A DNA stretch of 64,000 nt from Salpingoeca rosetta. Lineage: Eukaryota; Protista; Choanoflagellata. This document shows positions 2,226-64,000 of the stretch, in pieces. The stretch is from positions 124,001 to 188,000 of the forward strand of contig JAWQFM010000008.1 of assembly GCA_033442325.1 (NCBI GenBank), in the 5' to 3' direction. The notes beneath the pieces were generated by a model. That model saw only the letters and a program-made list of their open reading frames with translations. It was not told the origin of the DNA and searched no databases. The position numbers were made by a program, and so were the translations under genes. Position 1 is the first letter of the stretch; each line of letters starts with the position of its first letter.

Positions 2226-3184
2226 TCTCGCCTTCGCACAGCGTTGGTGGTGGTGTCTGGTGGGGTGGTGGTGGTGACGTCGCGCGCAGCAAGCAAGGGG
2301 GCAGGCCTAGGGCTGAAGCCTTCGAGCGAGTGTGCGCGTGGGCGTGCGTAGGTGCGTGTGAGAGCAGAGATGCTTCGCTCTCTGAATGCGGGCACTCTGC
2401 GAGCGGCGGCGAGGTTCAAACTCTTGTGCACTGCGAGGTTTAAACGTGGTGTAGGCTTGCTCGAGATCTGCACGAGACGAGGCGATGAGCTGGAGGAGGT
2501 GGTGGAGAGGAGGGTGGATGGATGAAAGGTGGCGGTGATGGCGGTTGGTCGAAGTGCCGTGGCCTGTTAGCCTGTTGGATTCCAAGAAGGTAGGCAAGGC
2601 GATGGAACGGTGATATCGGCAGTAGGGAGGATGGTCTGGTAGCGAGGGAGGAAAAGAAGGGGTGCTTGTTGAGTCGGAGCCAACCACGAACAGAGCGGGC
2701 GCGTGGAAATGGAAGCACCCACCACCACGATTCAACAGACGAAGGGGCAGCTAGTGTACACTCATGCATCGAGGGCACAGAGAGCCAGCTATGGTGGTAG
2801 ACCGAACGAAGAAAGGGCAGAGCAGGGGTAGTCACCGTCACCACCGCCAGCCGGTGGTTTACATGCATACCAGGTGAGCATGTGTGCCAATGACGCAAAG
2901 CTGAACGGTTTCCAGTTCCAGTTCCCAGAATCGGGTCGAGCAATCGCAGATGCATCGTCGCGCTTGCCGTCATCATCGAGGTTGCTGACTTACACCGACG
3001 ACAGCTTTAGTCGCTATGTCTTTTTCATCATCATTGTCATCCACCAGCCAGCCGCGCTGCATCAAGCACATCGGCGCAGCCACTACTCCAAACAACACAA
3101 ACCAACAGAATGAGCTTGCGACAGAACTGTCAATCACCACAGCCCCATTCCAGGAAACTTGCACTGTTCTGAGGATTCCAGCCA

Positions 3185-3609
3185 TCACTTCGCCGAATCG
3201 GGCACATCACGAACCCGGTTCTTGAACTTGCGATTGTGGTCGTGCATGTTTTGTCGCTACAAACCACGCCCTCACAGACGCATCATGCCCAAGGCAATGA
3301 TTGCAAGACACGTGCCAACACGTACGCACTGAGAAGGGCAACGCTACGCAACACAACCACACACAGGGCAGCTTGGTGTAATGGTGGTGGTGCTTATGTC
3401 TTCGGCTGGGGTAGCTTCTTGCTTTGGGCGGCGTCGTCGTGATTTCGCAAGACAGCCCTGGCTCTTGCACACACGCCGGCCGTGGTGGATCAGCAGCAGG
3501 TGCAGCGCATACCTGATCAAGTGGTCCAAGGGTCAAGTGGTGATGCGTGCACATCACGCGTGAGAGCATGTAAGCACACACAACCACACACAACCACACA
3601 ACCACACAA

Positions 3610-3669
<60 letters not shown>

Positions 3670-3980
3670 CCACACACACACACACAGACCCAAGCGCACA
3701 GCACGAGCGTGAGGTGCGCGTCCGAACGAGGCCATCATGACCACTCACTTTAAGTCATCCGGAACAGTGGCGTTGAGGTGCTCGTAAGTCGTTTCCCGCG
3801 TCACGCCCGGCCACGAATGCAACGAAGAAGCGCTGCAGTTCTGGGTGTCGTTGCTAATCCGTTTGGCCCGCTTCCTGCTGTTCTTGCTAGCGACGGAACA
3901 CGATGACTGCTCTTGTTCAACGACCCGGTTGTGCTTTCGCACCTCCACATCACTCGGCACCCACCCTGCTCTCTGTGTTC

Positions 3981-4046
<66 letters not shown>

Positions 4047-4683
4047 AAGTGAGGCACAAAAGGCTCATCTCACCGAAAACAACAACAGATGCAAACACAA
4101 GCATGCAAGCGCCAAGTGTGCTGCCACCTTGGCCAGACGGAAGACGTGCGTGTCCACAGCCATGTCGGGCCTTTGCATGGCAAACAAGAGCAGGCAGGAA
4201 ATAGTTTTCGGACCCACGCCTTTAAACCTGCACAGTGAACAAGCAATGGTGCGGGGGCCATGCGTTTGTGAGCTGCTGATGCGCGTGCACAAGTGCCGCA
4301 AGCACACAAGCACACGAGCGTGCGAGTACAACAAGCACAGCATGTTTTCCATGAATAAACCACTAAACCCATACAACATGCACACACGTACACACAAATT
4401 GTTCCAAACACATTAAACACTCACTCACCCACACACCTACACCCACACACCCTCAAACACACCAAACACATATCCCCCAACACGCACCTGGCGAGCTGCT
4501 CCTTCACGGTGTGTGATGGCAGCTCCCGCAAATACTCCAGACTCAACTGCGAGTACAACAACAAAGTGTGGCAACACATCATCTCATGTCACGGCAGAGA
4601 ATGCACATAATGTAATGCAGCATAAACCAGGCGCAGATCACTTGATGCACGATACCATCCAGCACCAGTTGACGTGCGAGAGT

Positions 4684-4735
<52 letters not shown>

Positions 4736-5884
4736 AGTATTTTGTGTGTGTGTGTGTGTTTCCAAAGAGGAAAGGAGGAAGGAGCAAGACAGCGATAGCT
4801 TTGCCCGTGTGTGCGTGCACGTGTATTGTCGCACCTTGCCGTGCTCCGCGTGCAGTGTGTCGAGAATGGACTTGATGCGCCTGTGAATGGGGGGGGGGGG
4901 TGGCACAAACACAACCGGGGGGGGGGCGTATGTCATGCGCGTAAAATCAGACAAGTTGCAGAAAGCCATGTGGCATCGTGAGCAGATGCGTGTCATGTAC
5001 AATGCATGATACCGAGGGCACCGAAGTTGCAAAACAGCAGAGTGGTGGAGTGCAATCGACTGAGCCCCACGCAACCAGCCACGTTGACGAGAGACGACAA
5101 GGAACGGAAGCAAGCACGAAGGCGAGCACGCATGCAACAAACAACAAGTACACCACACAAAAGTGCTTGATGAGACGAACCTTGATTTTGTTTGGGCGAG
5201 GCCTGCTGATCTGATGGCCGCCTCCAGTGCACCAACATCTGCGCTGTGCACATCCTCCCATGTTGGAAACCTGAGGAACACGCATTGCACACACGCACAC
5301 ACACATATGTGCACACGTACGAATACCCACACCCATATCCGTACACGTGCAAAACACAACCATACCCATACCAAACCACACACACACACACACATACCAC
5401 ATTTACAGACGAGAAACAAAGCATACACACCGCATTGACAGACGAGAAACAAAGCATACACACGCACATGCACATCGACTCGATGAGGCAATGTGGATGT
5501 AGATCTCATGATGACATCACACCACCACATCACACCGAATTGATAAAGGGGGAGGGGCGGATGGCAAGGAGATGCAGCCGAAACACGGAAATACACACTC
5601 ACATACATCCACACACACACACACACACGTACACAGAGACACAGACACACACACACACACATACATACACACACAGACACGCGCACACAGATAGAATAAA
5701 CGTGCAAGAGTTTAAGAGTTAAGGGTGGCTAGCGCACGTTTGTTTGAGATTGCGAAAGGCGGCGCTTGAGTTTGAATCGGTTGTGTTCTGCGACAGGATA
5801 GTGCGGACCTGCTCATAGCGATGCCCACGAAGACGCGTGCCATATGAAACAACAACAGCAGCAGCAGCACCCATGAGCATATGG

Positions 5885-5967
<83 letters not shown>

Positions 5968-6943
5968 GATGATGATGATGATGATGATGATGTTGTTGTT
6001 GTTGTTGTTGTTTTTGCAAGCGATGAAACAAGCGCACATGCACGCACGAAAAACACACGACTGACGCGTGCAAGAATGTCATGCCAGTCAGGCAAAGCAG
6101 CGGCTGTGCCCCACAACCATCACCGCAGCCACACTGTGCTACTGTGGGCAGAATGCTGCCTTCCTGCCTTATGACTGTCCCTGTTCTCCTCCCTCTCCTT
6201 CAGCATGCACTTACGAGCGAGTCGAGGAGGTTGGTGTTGGCGGCTCTGTGGTGCGGCGGGCGCGTGCGAGGGCCGTACAGTTGCACCAGCGCATCGTGCA
6301 TGTGCTTGCACTCAGCTGGTGTGGGGTGCGGAAAGCCGAGAAATGGAGTGGATTGCGTCGTTAACGAAGAGCACACCACATGAGACTCCCCTCTGTTCAC
6401 ATGTCCAGGTGTTGGTTTGCTTGCTTGTGTGGAATGGAGGCGCACAGGTTTCGTGCGTGTGGTGCTGTATCTGGCACGGGCATTGAGCGGCGCGTGTTCA
6501 GCCCCGTCATTGTCACCCTCGGTGTCCTCCTTGACTTTCAATACACTGTCTTCATCCTTGACACGAGCTGCACTTCTTTTTCTCCTCTCTGCTCTCGTCA
6601 TCGGCCTCGTTGTCCCTGTGCTGCTGATGCTCGTGGTGCAACTAGCTTCAGTCATCCCATCCACCCTGACGCTTCCCAGCCTTCCGTCATCCTCCTCCGT
6701 CAAGGCACCCGCCAAGACCTCCTCCTCCTTCACATCTCCATCTTGTGCTAAGTTCCTCTCACTGTTTGGCGCATAAACCCCTTCCTTCTCCTCCTCTTCC
6801 ATCCCCGCTTCCTCTTCCTCCTTCACCTTCTCTTTGCCCTTGACAGCGTGCACGCGTGCACGCTGCCGCCTCCGTCCACCACCACCACCACCACCACCAC
6901 CACCTCGTCCACGGTCATTGTCAGCAGAGACGCTCAGCTCCAT
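3185..6943 (-). CDS. HhH-GPD superfamily DNA glycosylase/lyase (endonuclease III-like), multi-exon
   Basis: Spliced exons give LLDSL|VRTILSQNTTDSNSSAAFRNLKQT|FPTWEDV...AIRSAGLAQTKS|RRIKSIL...|LSLEYLRELP...|FKGVGPKTISCLLLFAMQRPDMAVDTHVFRL...|YALHLLLIHHGRRVC. The HhH motif GVGPKT (catalytic Lys) and VDTH (catalytic Asp) are present. The 3' end is either 3344 (unspliced) or 3185 (last exon FKNRVRDVPDSAK*). Confidence 0.9.
5884..6010. repeat. (GTT)n/(GAT)n compound trinucleotide tract in a glycosylase intron
   Basis: Seen directly. Confidence 0.95.
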
Positions 6944-7043
6944 GTTGTGCAGACATTGGCTGGTCCTGTCGCCGCAACAATGTCCCCGCAACAACTGATT
7001 ATGAATAACCATTGAAAATATGCACAAATTTTCAGCAACGACG
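6944..7043. promoter_or_regulatory. Putative compact bidirectional promoter (100 bp between divergent ATGs)
   Basis: Predicted start codons at 6943 (-) and 7044 (+). Locally AT-richer, with CCGCAACAA twice and a TGAAAAT...ATTTTCA inverted repeat. Confidence 0.55.
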
Positions 7044-10463
<3,420 letters not shown>

Positions 10464-55897: not shown

Positions 55898-57327
55898 ACA
55901 CATACTGCTGCGTCTGCCCTCTCACATCTGCCTGCACACGTCGACCTTCTGCCTTCCATATCTGGTGCAGGTGAATCTTGGCCTGCACGGCTACCACGAG
56001 CGGTACTACAAGCTCAAGTTTGGCGACAGCGTGCAGCCCCGCGACGTGGCGCGCGCATATGTGGAGGGCCTGTGCTGGGTCATGAAGTACTACTACGAGG
56101 TACGCGCGCGTGGTTCCGGTGGTGTGACACAGGATCATTATCGTCATCACCATCATCACCATCATCAACAACAACAAAAACAACCACAACAACAACGTCC
56201 ATTGCCACGACAACGATCGAACTCACATGTTTTACGCGTGCGCGTCTGCTCCCTGTTTGTACGTCCGCATCGTCATTCCTTGCTGTGTCCTGTGCATCAG
56301 GGCTGTCCGTCGTGGAACTGGTTTTACCCATACCATTACGCTCCTTTCGCGCAGGATTTTGTCGACGTTGCCGTGAGTCTTCGTGCACATGCGCCTCAGA
56401 TTGTGGTTACGTTCCAGTAACGTGCCCTTCATCGGCCCAACACGCACACGCCTGTGCTCATGCCGATAGTGTGTGTGTGGTGCTGGTCGCATCGTTTCAG
56501 GGGATGTCGATTCGCTTTGATGGTGGGTCGCCCTTCACGCCGTTCCAGCAGCTGATGGCCGTCTTCCCGCCCGCGTCCTCGCACGCCCTTCCCCAAGCAT
56601 ACAGGAACCTCATGCTGTGAGTGTGATCGTGCATGTGCGTGTGTGCATTTGTGCGTGGCAACCTCTCCCTTGTCTCCCTCCCCCCCCCCCTCCCTTTGCC
56701 TCCCTCTCTCCCTCCAACTCCTTCCCTCACACCTCTTGTACGCCACCGCCACCAATGCCTACCAGGGACCCCAAGAGTCCCATTGCAGACTTTTATCCAC
56801 GCGAGTTTGAACTCGACTTTGACGGTGCCCGGTTTGCCTGGCAGGCCGTGGCCCTCCTCCCCTTTATCGACGTCGGTTGCCGCTGCATGCATGTTGTCTG
56901 CAAAGTAGCGCGTAAATCTGCTTGCTTTGCTGGCTCGATTCTTGCTACATACTTGTGTGAGCGTGTGTTTTCCTGTTTTCGTGCGCGCAAGCTCGCTTGA
57001 CTGCGGTTTGCTGCACTTCTGTCGGAGCACTGATGATGATGTGTTGTGTACGCTGCCGCTCCAACCGCTCGAATGACTCCAACCTCATGTGCCCCCGCTG
57101 CGCCACCAGGAGACGCGCCTGCTGACGGCAATTGCACCGCTGGAGTCGACGCTCACGGAAGAGGAACGGCGGCGAAATGCACGCGGTGTCAACCTCCTTC
57201 ACGTGCACCAGGTGTGGCTGCACAGGTGCACTAACTCATGCGCTCGCACATAAAACGCATCTGCACGCGCGTTAGCATATTAGACTGCGTACTTGCCTGC
57301 AGACGAAGCCCATCTTTGTCCTTGGTG

Positions 57328-57420
<93 letters not shown>

Positions 57421-57775
57421 GTTGTGTTGTGTTGTGTTGTGTTGTGTTGTGCTCCGCTCACATCCACCCTTCTCTACCTCCTGCCCTCTCTTTATTTGTG
57501 TCTCCTTCAGCGCCACCCGCTTGCACTGCAGGTTGTGCCTCTCGACCCTGACTTTAGTGGTGACGACAATGATGCCCGCGAGCACCAGCAGCAGCAGAAA
57601 GAGCAGGAAGAGAACAAGCAGTCGCCAGGTGAGGCTGCCACGGCTGAACAGGCGGGCACACCACTGCTCTCTGAGGCGGAACAGAACGCGCTGGCGGCGG
57701 AGCAGCTGCAGGCCGAGCTCATGGGCGATTACGAGCGCGCAGATGAACTGAAGAGGAAACTCGAAGCTGCACAGC

Positions 57776-57848
<73 letters not shown>

Positions 57849-58950
57849 GTCGGGCAATGTGGTCGTGAATGCGACTGATGCTGCAGCAGCTGAAGCTTAC
57901 AAGACAAGCCTTCCACAGGGTGCAGAAGAGATCAGGGATGTCTCACAGACAGGCATATCTGGGTTTGTTCGCTATTCTCAGCTCTCCGTTGGGCTCGGCG
58001 TCTTGTACACCCCGCCCGAATTTAAGGGGAAAAACACGGACAGTGTGTATCTTCTCAAGGCGTTCACCAATCGCACGGCCATGTCGCAATACTACTTCCC
58101 AGCGCCCTGCAAGCACCAGTCACGCATCCTGCCAGCCTGCACCCTCCCGACCCCTGTGCTGGACAACCTGGACACGATCAACTTCCCCCGCTTCGTGTCT
58201 GTTCCTCGTGGTGGCTACCACGGCGGTCCCCCAATGATGCATGGCCGCTCCCGCGTGCCCTCCCAGTTCCAGCTGGCGGTGGCGCCTGGCGGTGGTGGTG
58301 GTGGCTTCCCTGCCGGCCCGCGCCCCGGTGTGCATTACCGCAATCAGATCACTGCTGCCTTCCACGCACCGCCGCTCCTGCCCACCGGTCCCCAGCAGCA
58401 CGCGCCATACCCCCACCACGACTCGTATCAGCGCGACCCGTATGCAGCAGCACTGCCGCCGCCGTCACACAGGCCACCGTACCGCCCACCAGCGCATGCA
58501 CACGGGCGCGGAACGTACCCTGCGCCTGGTCGTGCCCCGACCCGTCCGCCCTCACAGCTGACCCAGCCATATCTGGGCTCGCGTCCCCCACCCCCGGGCT
58601 CGGTGTACCGGCCGTCGTACCCACCGGCACATGCCGGATCACGCCCGCCACGCGCTGTGTACGGTGGACCCGACAGGCACGCAGCCCCGTACCAGCCACA
58701 ACCGCCAGGGCAGGGATACCGCAGGTACCCTGATCGCCAGCGTGACTATGCGGATTACGGAGCCACACGCTCTGACCAGTATGTGCCCTCTCGCGCGTAC
58801 GGGTCACGCCCGCCGCCACCGCCGCATCAACAGCGCACATATCCAGCCAGCCACGGCGGACCGCCGCCCCCTGCACCGCAGCAACAACAACAGCAGCAGC
58901 AGCAGCAGCAAGGCTATCGTCCCACACACTTTCCCTCTGCGCGCAAGTGA
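49957..58950 (+). CDS. XRN2: 5'-3' exoribonuclease 2 (XRN2/Rat1) with an R3H insertion, multi-exon
   Basis: M|[143 protein letters not shown]. Confidence 0.96.
57329..57415. repeat. (CT)n tract in an XRN2 intron
   Basis: Seen directly. Confidence 0.95.
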
Positions 58951-59489: not shown

Positions 59490-62105
59490 TCAGGAAAAGG
59501 GATTGGACGGGTGCCTGCCAAAACTGCCGGTGTTGATGGAGGAGAATGCTGGTGTGGGGGGATTATGCTCGTCCTTCAAAGAGACAGGCAAAAGCTCTTC
59601 TGGATGGTGGTGCACCGTGTCATGCTGGTGGTACTGAGGATGTCGCTGTCGATGTTCACGATGGTGGTGCTGATGTTCGTGGGATTGTGCTTGCCGCTGG
59701 TATCGATGCCCTTGAGAAACAAACGGGGACCCGTCCTTGTTGTCGTTGTCAATGTCACCAGTGCGACCGTCACCACCATCGCCCTGCTGCTCATGACGCT
59801 GCGAGTGAAGAACATACATGTCAGTGTTGTGCGAGATGCTGCTTCTGCTGGAAGTGGAGTCGTTTGACATGGGCGATTTGCCCTCCTCGGCCACCATGTC
59901 GCGAAGCACTGACGCCTGCGCTCGAAGCCGCTGCAGTTCCGCTTGAATGGCACCCTTCTTCGCCTCCTCTTCGCTCACCTGTTCATCATGGCAATGGCGT
60001 GGGTAGTAGTCGTTATTGGCGTTGTGGGCGTGGTGGTGATGGTAGTGTGGTGTGATGGTGGTAGTGGCAGTGTAGTGTGGTGGTGGTAGTGTGGTGGTAG
60101 TGTGGTGTGACCGTGAATGTGTGGGTGTGCGTGAGCACAAGGCGTCATTGGAAGGCTATCCAACATCAAGGCAAGACACACCACCACCTTCCAATTGCCA
60201 TTTCTCAGACAAAGCACCCAAGAGTCATTATATTGCAACAACTGCTGCGATACTTACGCGTTGCTGCAATGCGGCCTCTTCCAGCTTGTCTCGCTGCCGT
60301 CGCTGCCGCATGTACTCGCGCCGCCACTGCCGTGCCGCTTCCTGTCGTATGCACACACAGCACACAAGCACATAGGCACATAGACAATGTATGCACACAC
60401 ACACACACATCATTTGCAATGAGAACCAGCCAGGTTGCAAGGTACATCAACACGTGTTTCCTTGAGAGTTGTGTGCACGGCTGTTGTGAAACATGAGTAT
60501 TTGCTGGCTGTGGCACTTTGTACGCACATCGCGCTCTTCCTTTGTGTTTCCTCGAATCTTCGTTGCGGGCTTGTTCGTTTCTGATGAAGCAACAGTGATC
60601 GTGTGAAAGGTTCGAGGTTAGCTGCGCCATGTTACATGAGACGCAAGAAAAACAATCGCAGTGAACTTGCCCATACACATGCACACGCGCAGATACACTG
60701 CAGGCACACACGCACGCACACGCACACACACACACATGTACCTGAGAAGCGTTGGACTTGTTCCAACTGAATCGGTAGTACCGTACAAGGCATTGCAGTA
60801 TTGATGAGGCGGTGATCATGAATGGTCAATGGTCAACACTCCAACGCTAAACACACGCTCGCAACACCAGCAACTGTCAAACACAGCCCTCTTGCTGTCT
60901 GCATGTGAAGAATGGTGCACATACGCACGCACACACACACACACAATGTCAACGCTGTCAACAGACCGTTGGTTTCTCGTGTCGTTGCAGGACTTGCGCA
61001 CAGAGATCGTGACCACTGTTCACAGCCTCTTGCAGCGCGGTGCGCTGGGAAAGGTTCACCCTTTCCACTAGCAGATACAGCGAGGGCGCATGGACAAACG
61101 CCTGCTCAAGCAACTACGGTGACGAAAACATGCGTTGCACGTGTGTGCCCGTGTGAAATGTGGATGAAGCGTGTGCAAAGAAATGTGAGCCATAAATGTT
61201 TCAAGCGCCTGTGCAGAGGAGAACGCCAACGTGCTGCAAGCGTGCATGTGTGCATATGTGGATGCGTGTTTTCAAAGCAGCGAACATAGATTGCTGGCCC
61301 AAAGGTTACAATGCACAATGCACAAAGCTCTCTCTCTCTTCATACCTCTGCATGTCCTTCCCGACACAATATGTGCAAGAGGGTGTTGCCATCTGCCGTG
61401 GTCTGGAAGGTGATGGGATGGTCGTTACGAGGGAGGTGGACGAGGGTGGAGAGGTAAAGTGAGGCCGTTGCTCGCAGTGGTGGGGAAGCGCACCAGAGCG
61501 AGCTCTCCAACCATGAAATCACGAGGGTGACATGAAACACGTCTAGTCGCACCATCGACCCACACCAAAACAGCATCGCCGGCACTAGTTGTCACCTTAC
61601 CATGTCGCACATGTTGGGGAAACGTTGTAGTAGTGTATGGACGGTGGGCGCCATATTTGTGGCTGCCTGTAGTTACATACGCAAGCGGGCGCACGAAGCA
61701 TGTACTGTGAGCTGCTGTACGCAGCACTGGCCGTGAAATGGCAAGGAAAGAGCGCTGATGGCGGCAGGGATGTGGTTGCAACGCGATTTCCACGGCGTCA
61801 GAACTCGTTCACACTCAGATACACTGCGCAACAACGTCAAGGCGACAGCGCACGAACATCAACACACCGCCCAGTGAAGTGCCGTCATGCCTCGCGTGTC
61901 CTTGATGGTGGGGTCGATGCTCGGGTGTGTAAGCAGCAGCTGCACCAGCTCTTCGTTGCCGTGCGATGCCGCAATGAGAAGTGGGGCCATGCCGTGTGCG
62001 TCTGGCGCGTTGACGTCGACTTGGTACTGCAGCAGCACAGATACCATGCCCGTGTCGCCGCCCGCAACTGCTAACGTGAATGGAGAGTGGCCCTGCCACA
62101 ACAAC

Positions 62106-62151
<46 letters not shown>

Positions 62152-64000
62152 CGCATGCGTGAGGGACAAGGTGGAACGAAGCGCCAGCCCAACATTTGAG
62201 GGTCAGGAGCATTGCCTCGTACACATGCTGACCTCCCGTTTGTGCAAGACATCGTATGCTACAATGTCCAGTTTTGACGCACCTCAGAGGACAGTAGATT
62301 GGGGTTGGCACCATTGGTCAGCAATGCCTGAGCAGTGCCTGTGGCTTGAAGAGACACTGCAATGTGCAAGGCCGGTATGCCATCTGGCGTGCGCACGTTT
62401 GGATCGGCGCCTTGTTGCAGCAGTGCCTGCACGGTCACCGCATCTCCAGAGCACACTGACACCAGAAGTGGCGGGAACGCCGCGCCAGACACGCCGCTTT
62501 CAATGCTGCGGTGCTGGAGCACTGCATGATGGTTGTATTGATGGTGGTGCTCCAGCGGAGTGGCGGAGGTGAAGGGGTTGCGCGTTGGGGCATTGGGGTG
62601 GTCGGGTTTAGACGCTTGCATCGCATACGATTGACTGAACTGTTGCCATGACCCAGAGGTCACCATCATTTCTGGGTTTGCTTGCTGGTCATGCTGTACC
62701 TACGTGCGTGCGTGCGTGCGTGCGTGCAGTGTGTGTGTGTGTGTGTGTGAGTGAGTGTGTATGTGTGTGTGAGTGTGTGTGTGTGTGTGCGCGCATGTGT
62801 ATGTATACCTGAATGAGCAAGCGAAAAGAGTTAGTACCATGGTGTGCGTGTGTGAGCAACAAAGAAACAGGGAGGACAAGCGAAGCATCACACGCAAGCA
62901 TCTCCTGAACACCAACACGAAAACAATACAGCACTGCCACACGACCAACCGCAAAGACGTCGTGGTGCGGGTTGGGCATGAATGGCACGCCACCGGCGGC
63001 AACAAAAGCCGATTCCTCAAACGCGCCATCAGCAACAAAGGGTGGCATGCCCTCCATATCGTCGGCATCACTGGCGCTATTGGTCCCAGGAGAGATGTCT
63101 GCGTACAATGAAGACTTGTCATCGTTCGAGAGGTGGCTCAAGTCATCAAGGTCCAGCATCTGATATGCCCACAGGGATTGTAAGCGTGAGTTACAAAGAC
63201 GAGGCAGGCACAAAGTCAAGTGTCTGTCCAACAACTCGGAGAGGAGATGAGATATGGATCAGGGACGTGTGTGCTCGGACACCACTCGGGCGACTTGTAC
63301 ATGTGGCCGGTACACGTGCATTGGCAAAGAAATGCGCACTTGCTCTTGACCCTGTGGTTGCATGTATGATACACACACGCGCGCGCGCGCGCGCAATCAC
63401 GCACCCGCAGACAGACCACGCACGCTCGCATGGGCACTACACGACATGAGCGTTCGTACAACGCACATCCTATGACTCACATCGTTGTCGAAGCTGTGGT
63501 GTCCTTGTGGGCGCTTTCGCATCTTGAAGAGGGTCAGGATGACCACTGCGATGAGGACAGAGCCTGCAGCCAGCCCAATGACGATGGTCGTGGCTGTCGA
63601 CGACAAGCGGCTTCCTCGGTTTGGCTTGTTCACTGCAACATCGTCGTCATCCACACGTGCGTTGTCATCGTCGTCATCATCGCCATCATTGCCAGGTGGT
63701 TGTGGTGTTGCCGTTGTGTCAGTCGGTTGAGCAGTGGTTCTTGGTGGCTGTGTTGTGACCGGATCCGTTGGCTTGAATGGCGTATGCGGTGCGGTTGTGG
63801 GCGGTGCACTCGACGTGACCTTGTTTGAGGCTATTGAGGGTCGAAACATGTCGCTCGTCGTCGTCGCTAAGCCTGTCGAAGTTGCAAGCGTGGATGAAGT
63901 GGAAGTTGTGACAACAGTGGGTGTTGTTGTTGTTATTGTTGTTGCTGTGGTGGTGGTGGCGGTGGCGGTTGTTGTTGCTGTGGCGGTTGTATTTGTAGTG
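59490..64000 (-). CDS. 3' part of a single-pass membrane protein: Thr-rich stalk, TM, Notch-like ankyrin repeats, bZIP-like domain (5' end outside window)
   Basis: Phase-compatible GT-AG exons: >64000-63481, 63159-62950, 62699-62283, 62092-61868, 61666-61601, 61402-61346, 61113-60967, 60766-60742, 60580-60528, 60341-60258, 59978-59490. TM is IVIGLAAGSVLIAVVILTLF followed by KMRKR. Ankyrin motifs include GIPALHIAV, GHSPFTLAV, GMAPLLIAA, GMTALHWAA and GNTLLHILC. Confidence 0.8.

What the first reader, a model, noticed from the sequence alone, without database searches (positions are those of the whole stretch)
59490..64000. Notch-like receptor with a built-in bZIP-like domain: candidate membrane-tethered transcription factor
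Seen: eleven minus-strand exons join with canonical GT-AG sites and matching phases into one reading frame. In order it encodes a mucin-like Thr/Pro stalk, an acidic patch, one TM helix (about 63526-63585) with a basic stop-transfer KMRKR, an acidic juxtamembrane linker, about seven ankyrin(-like) repeats, a basic region plus heptad zipper, and a His/Gln/Ser/Pro tail. The ORF track splits this into unrelated pieces. The key link is the phase-0 intron 63480-63160 (GAT|gtgagt...atcag|ATG). Knowledge: the spliced stretch GMTALHWAAATNMAPTVHTLLQRFPNMCDMTTADGNTLLHILCREGHAE parallels Notch ankyrin repeats 5-6 (GKSALHWAAAVNN...LL...DMQ...ETPLFLAAREGSYE). Animal Notch has no DNA-binding domain and relies on CSL through a WxP RAM motif, and no such motif is seen here. 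Inference: a receptor whose intracellular domain is released by intramembrane proteolysis and then dimerises or binds DNA through its own zipper, i.e. a possible CSL-independent, one-component Notch-like pathway in a unicellular relative of animals.
Basis: partly seen in the sequence, partly recalled or inferred. Interest (0 to 1): 0.9.

Follow-up and report, generated by a model that had tools for sequence, protein, structure and literature searches.

The report
Membrane-anchored ankyrin–bZIP receptor-like protein
This choanoflagellate (Salpingoeca rosetta) gene really does encode one protein with a sugar-coated outer stalk, one membrane pass, seven ankyrin repeats and a divergent bZIP-type tail, and it belongs to a small undescribed family that could carry signals straight from the cell surface to genes; it is not a Notch relative, and cleavage and DNA binding are untested.

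Summary
RNA-seq junction reads and contigs support every intron, including the key 63480-63160 link. The result is an 11-exon, 1067-aa gene: signal peptide, Thr/Pro mucin stalk, acidic patch, one TM helix, acidic linker, seven ANK repeats, a 65-residue basic-plus-zipper helix and a His/Gln/Ser tail.

The public Salpingoeca rosetta annotation splits it into PTSG_03073 and PTSG_03072. It misses exons 5-7 and the first 353 residues.

"Notch-like" holds only for topology. The gene has no EGF, LNR, NOD or RAM WxP, and its ANK repeats match generic consensus ankyrins better than Notch.

"bZIP-like" is supported, but only at family level. This gene alone fails Pfam bZIP and lacks the signature Asn. 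Three other loci in the genome (contigs C2, C16, C24) carry the same TM, ANK and C-terminal basic-zipper layout. C2 passes Pfam bZIP_1. A profile of the three divergent members (shared RRxYMxxRR motif) matches genuine bZIPs at 85% hhalign probability.

First readers of this scan had already noted similar SP-TM-ANK-bZIP genes on other DNA of this genome.

Release by proteolysis, nuclear entry, dimerisation and DNA binding remain inferences. No orthologue outside S. rosetta was found, but the searches had length limits.

The parts
63481..64000 (-). Exon 1, the part inside the window. The exon runs on to the ATG at window-equivalent 64911 = L002:5912. It encodes the signal peptide, Thr/Pro mucin stalk, acidic patch, TM helix and stop-transfer (aa 1-477).
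   Evidence: ORF and splice model. RNA depth and contigs cover it with no internal joints. Pfam finds no domain. The ectodomain is 40-50% Thr.
63640..63690 (-). Extracellular acidic patch next to the membrane (aa 408-424, Asp runs).
   Evidence: Translation.
63523..63588 (-). Single transmembrane helix (aa 442-463), containing a GLAAG small-residue stretch.
   Evidence: It is the only hydrophobic 19-mer block apart from the N-terminal signal segment; Kyte-Doolittle mean reaches 2.8.
63508..63522 (-). Basic stop-transfer KMRKR (aa 464-468). It places the C-terminal part in the cytoplasm.
   Evidence: Translation. The orientation follows from the positive-inside rule and is an inference.
63160..63480 (-). 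Intron 1, phase 0, GTGAGT...CAG. This is the key link between the TM exon and the rest of the gene.
   Evidence: 10 + 64 spliced reads in two RNA runs and contigs of two other studies. The public model PTSG_03073 uses the same junction.
62950..63159 (-). Exon 2: acidic juxtamembrane linker (aa 478-547).
   Evidence: No Pfam domain.
62283..62699 (-). Exon 3: linker plus ANK repeats 1-2 (aa 548-686).
   Evidence: Contig pieces and loose ends give the junctions. Pfam Ank 36.9 bits.
61868..62092 (-). Exon 4: ANK repeats 3-4 and the start of repeat 5 (aa 687-761).
   Evidence: Joints. Pfam Ank 53 bits and Ank_2 49 bits.
61601..61666 (-). Exon 5 (aa 762-783), in ANK repeat 5. Absent from the public annotation.
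   Evidence: Joints 61667-61867 and 61403-61600, with 17-132 reads.
61346..61402 (-). Exon 6 (aa 784-802), in ANK repeat 6. Absent from the public annotation.
   Evidence: Joints.
60967..61113 (-). Exon 7 (aa 803-851): end of ANK repeat 6 and the capping repeat 7. Absent from the public annotation.
   Evidence: Joints. Weak Pfam Ank_2/Ank hits.
60742..60766 (-). Exon 8, a 25-nt micro-exon (aa 852-859 plus one base).
   Evidence: Joint 60767-60966, plus loose ends at both neighbours that spell the micro-exon. It is also in PTSG_03072.
60528..60580 (-). Exon 9 (aa 860-877): start of the long helix.
   Evidence: Joint 60342-60527. Also in PTSG_03072.
60258..60341 (-). Exon 10 (aa 878-905): basic region with the RREYMRQRR motif and the first zipper Leu (L902).
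   Evidence: Joints. Family alignment and bZIP register.
59490..59978 (-). Exon 11 (aa 906-1067 plus the TGA stop at 59490-59492): zipper heptads followed by the His/Gln/Ser/Pro tail.
   Evidence: Joint 59979-60257. No internal joint was seen, so the extra intron in PTSG_03072 is unsupported.
60967..62477 (-). ANK domain, seven repeats (aa 622-851), spread over exons 3-7.
   Evidence: Pfam on PTSG_03073 gives Ank 78.6 bits and Ank_2 77.6 bits. Repeat parsing. PDB ranking is generic.
59883..60542 (-). Basic-region plus leucine-zipper helix (aa 873-937), spread over exons 9-11. Heptad d positions are L902, E909, I916, L923 and L930.
   Evidence: AlphaFold2 gives one continuous helix with block-mean pLDDT 88-98. 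Heptads. Family profile against genuine bZIPs gives 85%. Language-model neighbours are bZIP clusters, score 0.92.

Best explanation
This is one expressed gene for a type I single-pass membrane protein. Outside the cell it has a heavily Thr/Pro-rich, probably O-glycosylated, mucin stalk with no recognisable binding domain. Inside it has an acidic linker, a seven-repeat ankyrin module, a divergent bZIP-type basic-zipper helix and a His/Gln-rich tail.

It is one of at least four S. rosetta genes (contigs C8, C16, C24, C2) that pair different ectodomains with the same order of TM, ANK repeats and C-terminal bZIP.

The most likely mode of action is a membrane-tethered transcriptional regulator. The ectodomain keeps the ANK-bZIP part at a membrane until shedding and intramembrane cleavage, or another release step, frees it. 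The freed part would enter the nucleus, pair through the zipper and regulate genes, with the ANK repeats recruiting or masking partners.

This copy, like C16 and C24, has RRxYMxxRR where bZIPs have N-x2-AA-x2-[CS]-R. It therefore either reads DNA in a non-canonical way or acts by pairing with other bZIPs, as the Asn-less bZIP CREBZF/Zhangfei is reported to.

Shown: the gene structure, its expression, the domain order, the family and the bZIP relationship. Inferred: topology, glycosylation, cleavage, nuclear entry, dimerisation and DNA binding.
For: - Gene model and TM-ANK-zipper continuity come from RNA junctions and the spliced ORF.
- The signal-like segment and the TM helix are the only hydrophobic blocks.
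- ANK repeats are confirmed by Pfam.
- AlphaFold2 gives a continuous 65-residue helix over the basic region and zipper.
- The heptad register has the canonical spacing, with the bZIP Arg at -10 from the first Leu.
- Genome-wide profile searches return only four loci at E < 1e-3, and all four have ANK repeats just upstream and a TM segment further upstream.
- None of the 19 other loci tested around the remaining bZIP_1 matches has ANK repeats within about 8 kb upstream of the match.
- The C2 member carries TM, ANK and bZIP in one uninterrupted 1276-aa ORF, and its bZIP passes Pfam at 28.9 bits against a 27.6 cut-off.
- BLASTP of this gene's basic-zipper gives E 5e-6 against C2 and 1e-4 against C16.
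- A profile of the three divergent members against 11 unrelated own-genome bZIPs gives hhalign 85.1%, E 6e-6, in register.
- The same profile against PDB returns mostly bZIPs, such as HY5, Fos, C/EBP-beta, CREB, GCN4 and Jun.
- Tyr-Met and the flanking Arg residues are invariant across the three divergent copies, which share only 30-38% identity overall.
- ESM feature neighbours are bZIP clusters.
- Presenilin is present in the genome.
- There is precedent for a mucin-type type I protein whose tail is released by gamma-secretase and enters the nucleus: CD43 (PMC3943294).
- There is precedent for a bZIP that lacks the Asn: Zhangfei (PMC3796484). Its longer isoform SMILE is reported to homodimerise but not to bind DNA (PMC9917820 abstract).
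Against: - This copy alone gets no Pfam bZIP hit at E <= 10. It scores only 8.8 bits against own-genome bZIPs, and 23 of 2000 register-preserving shuffles reach that score. Single-sequence hhalign probability is 9-20%.
- The bZIP Asn, Ala-Ala and Cys/Ser DNA-contact positions are all replaced.
- The C24 link rests on profiles only; BLASTP finds nothing.
- The ANK domains of the four genes are not each other's best matches. A common origin of the whole cassette is therefore not shown.
- Transcripts of the three other loci were not checked.
- No cleavage site, nuclear import or DNA binding has been shown.
- No orthologue was found outside S. rosetta.
Confidence: 0.5

Rival explanations
1. It is a surface mucin or adhesion-type membrane scaffold that is never released. 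The ANK repeats dock cortical or cytoskeletal partners, and the C-terminal helix is simply a dimerising coiled coil with a basic patch that binds lipid or protein. Its likeness to bZIP would be convergent or vestigial.
For: The ectodomain has no ligand-binding domain. The ANK repeats are generic and resemble those of scaffold proteins such as ankyrins and Kidins220. The bZIP contact residues are lost, and Pfam gives no hit. ANK plus a C-terminal leucine zipper also occurs in non-DNA-binding proteins such as MYPT1 and GABP-beta (own knowledge).
Against: Family-level bZIP homology in the canonical register. The C2 member has a Pfam-passing bZIP. The variant Tyr-Met and Arg positions are conserved exactly where DNA contacts lie. 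The His/Gln-rich tail and acidic linker are commoner in nuclear regulators; this last point is an inference.
Confidence: 0.25
2. It acts while still anchored. One version places it in the ER or inner nuclear membrane, with the ANK-bZIP part facing the nucleoplasm and binding chromatin. The other makes it a decoy that holds soluble bZIP partners away from the nucleus.
For: Membrane-bound bZIP factors that tether chromatin are discussed for type II bZIPs (PMC12652670 abstract). An Asn-less basic region fits a partner-trapping role like that of CREBZF (PMC3796484, PMC9917820).
Against: A long O-glycosylated-type mucin stalk and a signal peptide point to the secretory pathway and the cell surface; this is an inference. 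There is no localisation data at all.
Confidence: 0.15
3. It is a degenerate descendant of the ancestral choanozoan Notch that lost EGF and LNR and gained a mucin stalk and a zipper.
For: The topology is type I with seven ANK repeats, as in Notch. Notch is inferred to have been present in the choanozoan ancestor and lost in most choanoflagellates (bioRxiv 10.1101/211789). Drosophila and human Notch do appear among weak hits to ANK repeats 5-6, at 23-25 bits.
Against: About 40 other ANK proteins score higher on that same stretch, and Notch is absent from the top 60 for ANK repeats 1-5. There is no EGF, LNR, NOD or RAM WxP. LNR domains sit in other genes.
Confidence: 0.04

Closest known systems
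Notch receptors (EGF-LNR-TM-RAM-ANK-PEST)
   Same: Type I single-pass topology. About seven ANK repeats in the intracellular part. The idea of an intracellular domain released by presenilin that acts in the nucleus.
   Different: It has no EGF, LNR, NOD/NODP or RAM. The ANK repeats are not specifically Notch-like. It carries its own basic-zipper, whereas Notch relies on CSL. Cleavage is untested.
Membrane-bound bZIP factors: ATF6, CREB3/OASIS family, plant bZIP17/28/60
   Same: A bZIP-type module tethered to a membrane by one TM helix.
   Different: Those are type II, with the bZIP N-terminal in the cytosol and the C-terminus in the lumen. They have canonical Asn-containing basic regions, are cut by S1P/S2P, and have no ANK repeats. 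This protein is type I with a C-terminal module and ANK repeats.
CREBZF / Zhangfei / SMILE
   Same: A bZIP whose basic region lacks the conserved Asn. It can pair through the zipper and acts by partner binding rather than by DNA contact (PMC3796484, PMC9917820).
   Different: It is soluble, has no TM or ANK, and shows no sequence kinship here.
Signalling mucins (CD43, MUC1, yeast Msb2)
   Same: A Ser/Thr/Pro-rich O-glycosylated stalk, a single TM helix and a signalling tail. The CD43 tail is released by gamma-secretase and enters the nucleus (PMC3943294).
   Different: Their tails are short and carry neither ANK repeats nor a basic-zipper.
GABP-beta and MYPT1 (ANK repeats plus C-terminal leucine zipper)
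   Same: An ANK module followed by a dimerising zipper. This comparison rests on my own knowledge and was not tested here.
   Different: They are soluble, and their zipper is not preceded by a bZIP-type basic region.

Membership tests
Notch receptor (criteria of Richter et al., bioRxiv 10.1101/211789: EGF, Notch/LNR, TM, Ank in that order) | EGF repeats in the ectodomain | tested here: not met
   Pfam finds no family in the 477-aa exon 1 product at E <= 1. The ectodomain is 40-50% Thr.
Notch receptor | Notch/LNR domain (and NOD/NODP) | tested here: not met
   No Pfam hit. The genome's LNR matches lie at C8:1985834 and C12:295878, not in this gene.
Notch receptor | TM helix followed by a cytoplasmic ANK domain | tested here: met
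   Spliced model supported by RNA. Pfam ANK. One TM helix.
Notch receptor | RAM region with a WxP motif after the TM | tested here: not met
   The only WxP (W86-S-P) lies in the ectodomain.
Notch receptor | ANK repeats closer to Notch than to other ANK proteins | tested here: not met
Notch is absent from the top 60 of 446 PDB hits.
bZIP (Pfam PF00170/PF07716/PF03131) | Score above the Pfam gathering threshold | tested here: not met
   No bZIP family is listed at E <= 10 for the spliced segment. Paralogue C2 passes at 28.9 bits, and C16 scores 12.5 bits.
bZIP | Basic region continuous with a heptad Leu zipper in one helix, at canonical spacing | tested here: met
   AlphaFold2 helix over aa 873-937. 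Heptad d positions L902/E909/I916/L923/L930 and Arg at -10.
bZIP | Signature N-x2-AA-x2-[CS]-R in the basic region | tested here: not met
   The aligned positions read R884, Y887-M888, R891 and R892, so only the final Arg is kept.
bZIP | Detectable homology to genuine bZIP domains | tested here: met
   Met at family level. The profile of C8+C16+C24 against 11 own-genome bZIPs gives 85.1%, E 6e-6. PDB hits are mostly bZIPs. BLASTP to the Pfam-positive C2 gives E 5e-6. The single sequence alone is inconclusive at 9-20%.
bZIP | Dimerisation and sequence-specific DNA binding | not testable with these tools
   The homodimer prediction gave no verdict. There is no DNA-binding assay.
Type II membrane-bound bZIP factors (ATF6/CREB3) | N-terminal cytosolic bZIP, C-terminal lumenal domain, S1P/S2P processing | tested here: not met
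   The order here is signal peptide, ectodomain, TM, then a C-terminal basic-zipper. Protease sites were not examined.
Presenilin/gamma-secretase substrates (functional class) | Type I single-pass protein in an organism that has presenilin, cleaved after ectodomain shedding | tested here: inconclusive
   Type I layout and a presenilin gene at C5:690-693 kb are both present. Shedding and cleavage cannot be tested here.

The most novel reading that the evidence does not exclude
S. rosetta has an undescribed family of one-component receptor-transcription factors. They are type I membrane proteins with interchangeable ectodomains whose ANK-bZIP intracellular domain is released by regulated proteolysis and acts directly on genes. 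Three of the four members would use a new RRxYMxxRR class of bZIP basic region with its own DNA or partner specificity. That would be a direct surface-to-nucleus route in the closest relatives of animals, parallel to Notch and independent of it.
Probability: 0.3. Interest if true: 0.85.

Novelty: new variant of a known kind. Interest (0 to 1): 0.6.

Why it matters
Membrane-tethered transcription factors are few: Notch, SREBP, ATF6/CREB3 and MYRF. All known membrane-bound bZIPs that I could find in the library are type II or N-terminally anchored. A type I, receptor-like ANK-bZIP family in a choanoflagellate would be a new way to wire the cell surface to gene control. It would also bear on how Notch-style signalling logic arose before animals. 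S. rosetta can be transfected and edited, so the prediction of a released, nuclear C-terminal fragment is directly testable.

On the practical side, the public gene models PTSG_03073 and PTSG_03072 need merging and extending. Catalogues of choanoflagellate transcription factors built on Pfam thresholds will have missed the three divergent members.

Tried and rejected
- **Homodimer prediction.** A prediction for residues 20-100 of PTSG_03072 scored 0.24 against a mark of 0.32. That is no verdict and is not evidence either way.
- **Searches for relatives elsewhere.** Exon 11 against 1.8 billion representatives found only itself. The TM/acidic region found only PTSG_03073. PTSG_03073 found only generic ANK proteins covering 17-46% of the query. 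The basic-zipper found only itself. The last three see only proteins of 0.55-1.75 times the query length, so full-length orthologues of about 1000 aa could not appear.
- **Paralogue searches with non-conserved parts.** Searches with exon 11 and with the linker were blank and at first suggested an orphan gene. That reading was wrong.
- **Circular bZIP reference.** My first own-genome bZIP reference (A1) unknowingly contained the C2 family member. The tests were repeated without it, and the earlier, higher numbers should be read with that in mind.
- **ANK domains as evidence of common descent.** Rejected, because family members are not each other's best ANK hits.
- **Further candidate loci.** Weak extra profile hits at C9:1232720 (an ordinary soluble bZIP) and C22:21124 (a coiled coil) are not family members.
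- **Other blanks.** The PDB sequence search with the single basic-zipper found only a chance endoplasmin hit. The look-up of encoding contigs found no record for PTSG_03072. Literature searches for the locus tags and for TM+ANK+bZIP in choanoflagellates found nothing.


Full report
**Where and what.** The window is G000:C8:124001-188000 of a 55.4-Mb, 68-contig assembly. The two public proteins that match the locus exactly are PTSG_03072 and PTSG_03073 of Salpingoeca rosetta. I fetched the flank beyond the window edge as L002 (window coordinate = L002 + 58999).

**Gene model.** Reading the minus strand, I placed eleven exons with GT..AG introns and matching phases. They give a 3204-nt CDS and a 1067-aa product with no internal stop. 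Exon 1 continues past the window edge to an ATG at window-equivalent 64911, which has an in-frame stop upstream.

**RNA support.** Two raw RNA-seq runs and the contigs of two other studies were laid on L002:400-6100.
- Seven introns are listed as joints at exactly the predicted bases.
- The key intron, 63160-63480, has 10 and 64 spliced reads and is present in contigs of both other runs.
- Introns 2 and 3 are given by contig pieces. One 1845-nt contig joins exons 4, 3, 2 and 1.
- The 25-nt micro-exon 8 is shown by a joint on one side and by loose read ends on both sides that spell its sequence.
- Depth inside intron 1 is 0.5-3 against 12-130 in the flanking exons, so there is no major transcript that starts at 63159 and skips the TM exon.
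- First mates lie on the + strand, as expected for a minus-strand mRNA.

**Public annotation.** PTSG_03073 (409 aa) starts at an internal Met (aa 354 of my model). It contains the TM helix and the same exon 1-2 junction, then runs into intron 4. PTSG_03072 (176 aa) starts at an ATG inside intron 7 and covers exons 8-11, with one extra intron in exon 11 that no read supports. Exons 5-7 and the first 353 residues are unannotated. The TM-ANK link was therefore already public. The link from ANK to the zipper, and the signal peptide plus mucin stalk, were not.

**Anatomy.**
- aa 1-22: a hydrophobic, signal-peptide-like segment.
- aa ~100-410: 50% Thr and 11% Pro, including three copies of a VTREPPQPTKGNAPT(n) unit.
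- aa 408-424: an Asp-rich patch.
- aa 442-463: the only other hydrophobic block (Kyte-Doolittle mean up to 2.8), followed by KMRKR.
- aa 470-620: an acidic linker (net charge -17) with no Pfam domain.
- aa 622-851: seven ANK-like repeats (Pfam Ank 78.6 bits and Ank_2 77.6 bits on PTSG_03073).
- aa 873-937: a basic stretch followed by heptads with d positions L902, E909, I916, L923 and L930.
- aa 938-1067: a His/Ser/Gln/Gly/Pro-rich tail.

AlphaFold2, run without an alignment, models aa 873-937 as one continuous helix with block-mean pLDDT 88-98.

**Is it Notch-like?** Only in topology.
- Pfam finds nothing in the ectodomain: no EGF, LNR, NOD or NODP.
- The only WxP motif is extracellular.
- ANK repeats 1-5 match ankyrin-1/2, DARPins, NompC, latrotoxins, Kidins220, tankyrase and TRPA1. 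Notch is not among the best 60 of 446 PDB hits.
They fall below ankyrins, NompC, Kidins220, espin, TRPA1, gankyrin, HACE1 and others.
- Richter et al. define Notch as EGF, Notch domain, TM and Ank in that order. They name PTSG_03468 as the closest S. rosetta protein and report Su(H) in all choanoflagellates (bioRxiv 10.1101/211789).
- In this genome I find presenilin, a LAG1/CSL-type gene and LNR domains, all at other loci.

**Is the tail a bZIP?** Taken alone, the evidence is weak.
- No Pfam bZIP model is listed at E <= 10.
- An HMM of 11 genuine bZIP domains from the same genome gives 8.8 bits. Those domains score 25-46 bits in leave-one-out tests.
- That score is reached by 2 of 2000 composition shuffles and by 23 of 2000 shuffles that keep the basic block and the heptad register.
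- Single-sequence hhalign gives 9-20%.
- The ESM feature search places the segment next to bZIP clusters (0.92, 168 shared features). By the tool's own calibration this is only a lead.
- In the aligned register, the bZIP Asn is R884, the Ala-Ala pair is Y887-M888 and the Cys/Ser is R891. Only the Arg at -10 from the first Leu is kept.

**The family.** A look at the scan's earlier notes showed that other first readers had flagged genes with the layout "signal peptide, TM, ankyrin, bZIP" on other pieces of this genome. I treated this as a lead and searched for such loci myself.
- I fetched 20 loci around the bZIP_1 matches. Only one of them has ANK repeats within about 8 kb upstream of the match.
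- That locus is C2:2192984-2196814. A single 1276-aa ORF there holds a TM helix with a KRRKQQKRR stop-transfer, Pfam ANK repeats and a C-terminal bZIP_1 (24.8 to 28.9 bits, depending on the sequence context scanned, against a 27.6 cut-off). Cys-rich and Thr-rich ORFs lie upstream on the same strand.
- The basic-zipper of this gene aligns to the C2 one at 40% identity over 48 residues, E 5e-6.
- A profile of the two, searched over the whole genome in six frames, found two further loci and nothing else below E 1e-3. These are C16:1119952 and C24:1144850.
- A profile of the three divergent members returns the same four loci.
- Both new loci show the same order on one strand: a signal-like start, an ectodomain (Thr-mucin in C24), a TM helix, a linker, ANK repeats and a terminal basic-zipper.
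- C24 has a plausible phase-0, 328-nt intron about 25 codons after its TM. This resembles the phase-0, 321-nt intron 1 here.
- The four basic-zippers align without gaps across the core.
- This gene, C16 and C24 share invariant Arg, Tyr-Met and Arg residues (RREYMRQRR, RRAYMQKRR, RAMYMRKHR) exactly where bZIPs have N-x2-AA-x2-[CS]-R. C2 keeps the Asn.

**Family-level test.** My first bZIP reference alignment contained the C2 member, so I repeated the test without it. The three-member profile against 11 unrelated own-genome bZIPs gives hhalign probability 85.1%, E 6e-6, over 54 columns in the canonical register. With the contaminated reference the figure was 91.8%. The same profile against all PDB sequences returns mainly bZIP chains aligned over basic region plus zipper, at marginal E-values of 0.013-1. 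They include HY5, c-Fos, C/EBP-beta, CREB, GCN4, Jun, ATF-2 and VBP. I conclude that the tail is a divergent bZIP relative and that the TM-ANK-bZIP layout recurs in this genome.

**Limits of the family claim.**
- The domains are short and the pairwise statistics are modest. C24 is linked to this gene only through profiles, since BLASTP finds nothing.
- The ANK domains of the four genes are not each other's best matches in the genome. The ANK domain of C16 is also generic rather than Notch-like.
- I could not check transcripts of the three other loci, because read laying is capped at one call.
- No relative outside S. rosetta was found. Three of those four searches could not see proteins longer than 1.75 times the query.
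- The literature library holds no paper with the locus tags or with this architecture.

**Mechanism.** A bZIP-type module has no obvious use at the cell surface, and the same cassette sits behind four different ectodomains. The best reading is therefore a receptor-tethered transcriptional regulator that has to be released, or else has to sit in a nuclear-facing membrane.
- Release by shedding and a presenilin-type cut is plausible. The protein has a type I layout, small residues (GLAAG) lie in the helix, and presenilin is present. The mucin CD43 is a precedent (PMC3943294).
- Nothing here shows that such release happens.
- The contact residues are replaced but conserved among three members. 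The module may therefore recognise DNA in a new way, or may act by pairing with other bZIPs as the Asn-less Zhangfei/SMILE does (PMC3796484, PMC9917820).
- A static scaffold with a dimerising coiled coil remains a serious rival.

**Verdict.** This is a new variant of a known kind, namely membrane-tethered transcription factors. Interest 0.6.

Noticed in passing
L026 (G000:C2:2188700-2198699), ORF 4285-8115 on the + strand: A second S. rosetta gene with a TM helix, ANK repeats and a Pfam-passing C-terminal bZIP_1 in one uninterrupted 1276-aa ORF. Upstream same-strand ORFs encode a Cys-rich and Thr-rich ectodomain with no Pfam domain.
   Followed up: partly
L035 (G000:C24:1138000-1147999), + strand, 3448-7219: A third locus: signal peptide, His/Asn-rich region, a very long poly-Thr stalk, TM, ANK repeats and a basic-zipper with RAMYMRKHR. 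There is a plausible 328-nt phase-0 intron after the TM exon. Transcripts were not checked.
   Followed up: partly
L036 (G000:C16:1113000-1122999), + strand, about 2380-7180: A fourth locus: signal-like start, small ectodomain, TM followed by an Asp run, a Gln-rich linker, ANK repeats in two exons (one reads ALHWAAAV, as in Notch, yet the PDB ranking is generic) and a basic-zipper with RRAYMQKRR. Pfam bZIP_1 scores 12.5 bits.
   Followed up: partly
window 59490-59978 (exon 11) and 60767-60790: The public model PTSG_03072 starts at an ATG inside intron 7 and has an extra intron within exon 11 that shifts the frame of the tail. No spliced read supports that intron.
   Followed up: yes
L002:5175-5938 (window-equivalent 64174-64937): In run X21 the 5' two-thirds of exon 1 has depth 4-9, against 38 at the TM-coding part. 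In run X22 it stays at 80-100. This could be 3' bias, or a condition-dependent internal start that would give a product beginning at Met354 without the signal peptide.
   Followed up: no
L002:5103-5160 (window-equivalent 64102-64159): Seven positions in the Thr-repeat region carry a second base in about 8-60% of RNA reads in both runs, and some also in contigs. The cause may be allelic variation or cross-mapping between the three repeat units.
   Followed up: no
window 62703-62800, 62105-62150, 60685-60740, 60380-60410 and others: Most introns of this gene carry (CA)n/(TG)n microsatellites. The read tool skipped several of them as repeats.
   Followed up: no
G000:C5:690419-693398; G000:C1:709703-710565; G000:C8:1985834-1985935 and C12:295878-295943: The genome holds a presenilin gene, a LAG1/CSL-type DNA-binding gene and two LNR (Notch-domain) matches, all at loci unrelated to this gene.
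   Followed up: partly
L035:~850-2500: A long run of N (withheld sequence or an assembly gap) flanked by (CA)n, upstream of the C24 family member.
   Followed up: no
window 57238-58950, + strand: The neighbouring 570-aa ORF has poly-Gln runs and a Pro/Gly/Tyr-rich C-terminal half, downstream of this gene's 3' end on the opposite strand. It was not examined.
   Followed up: no
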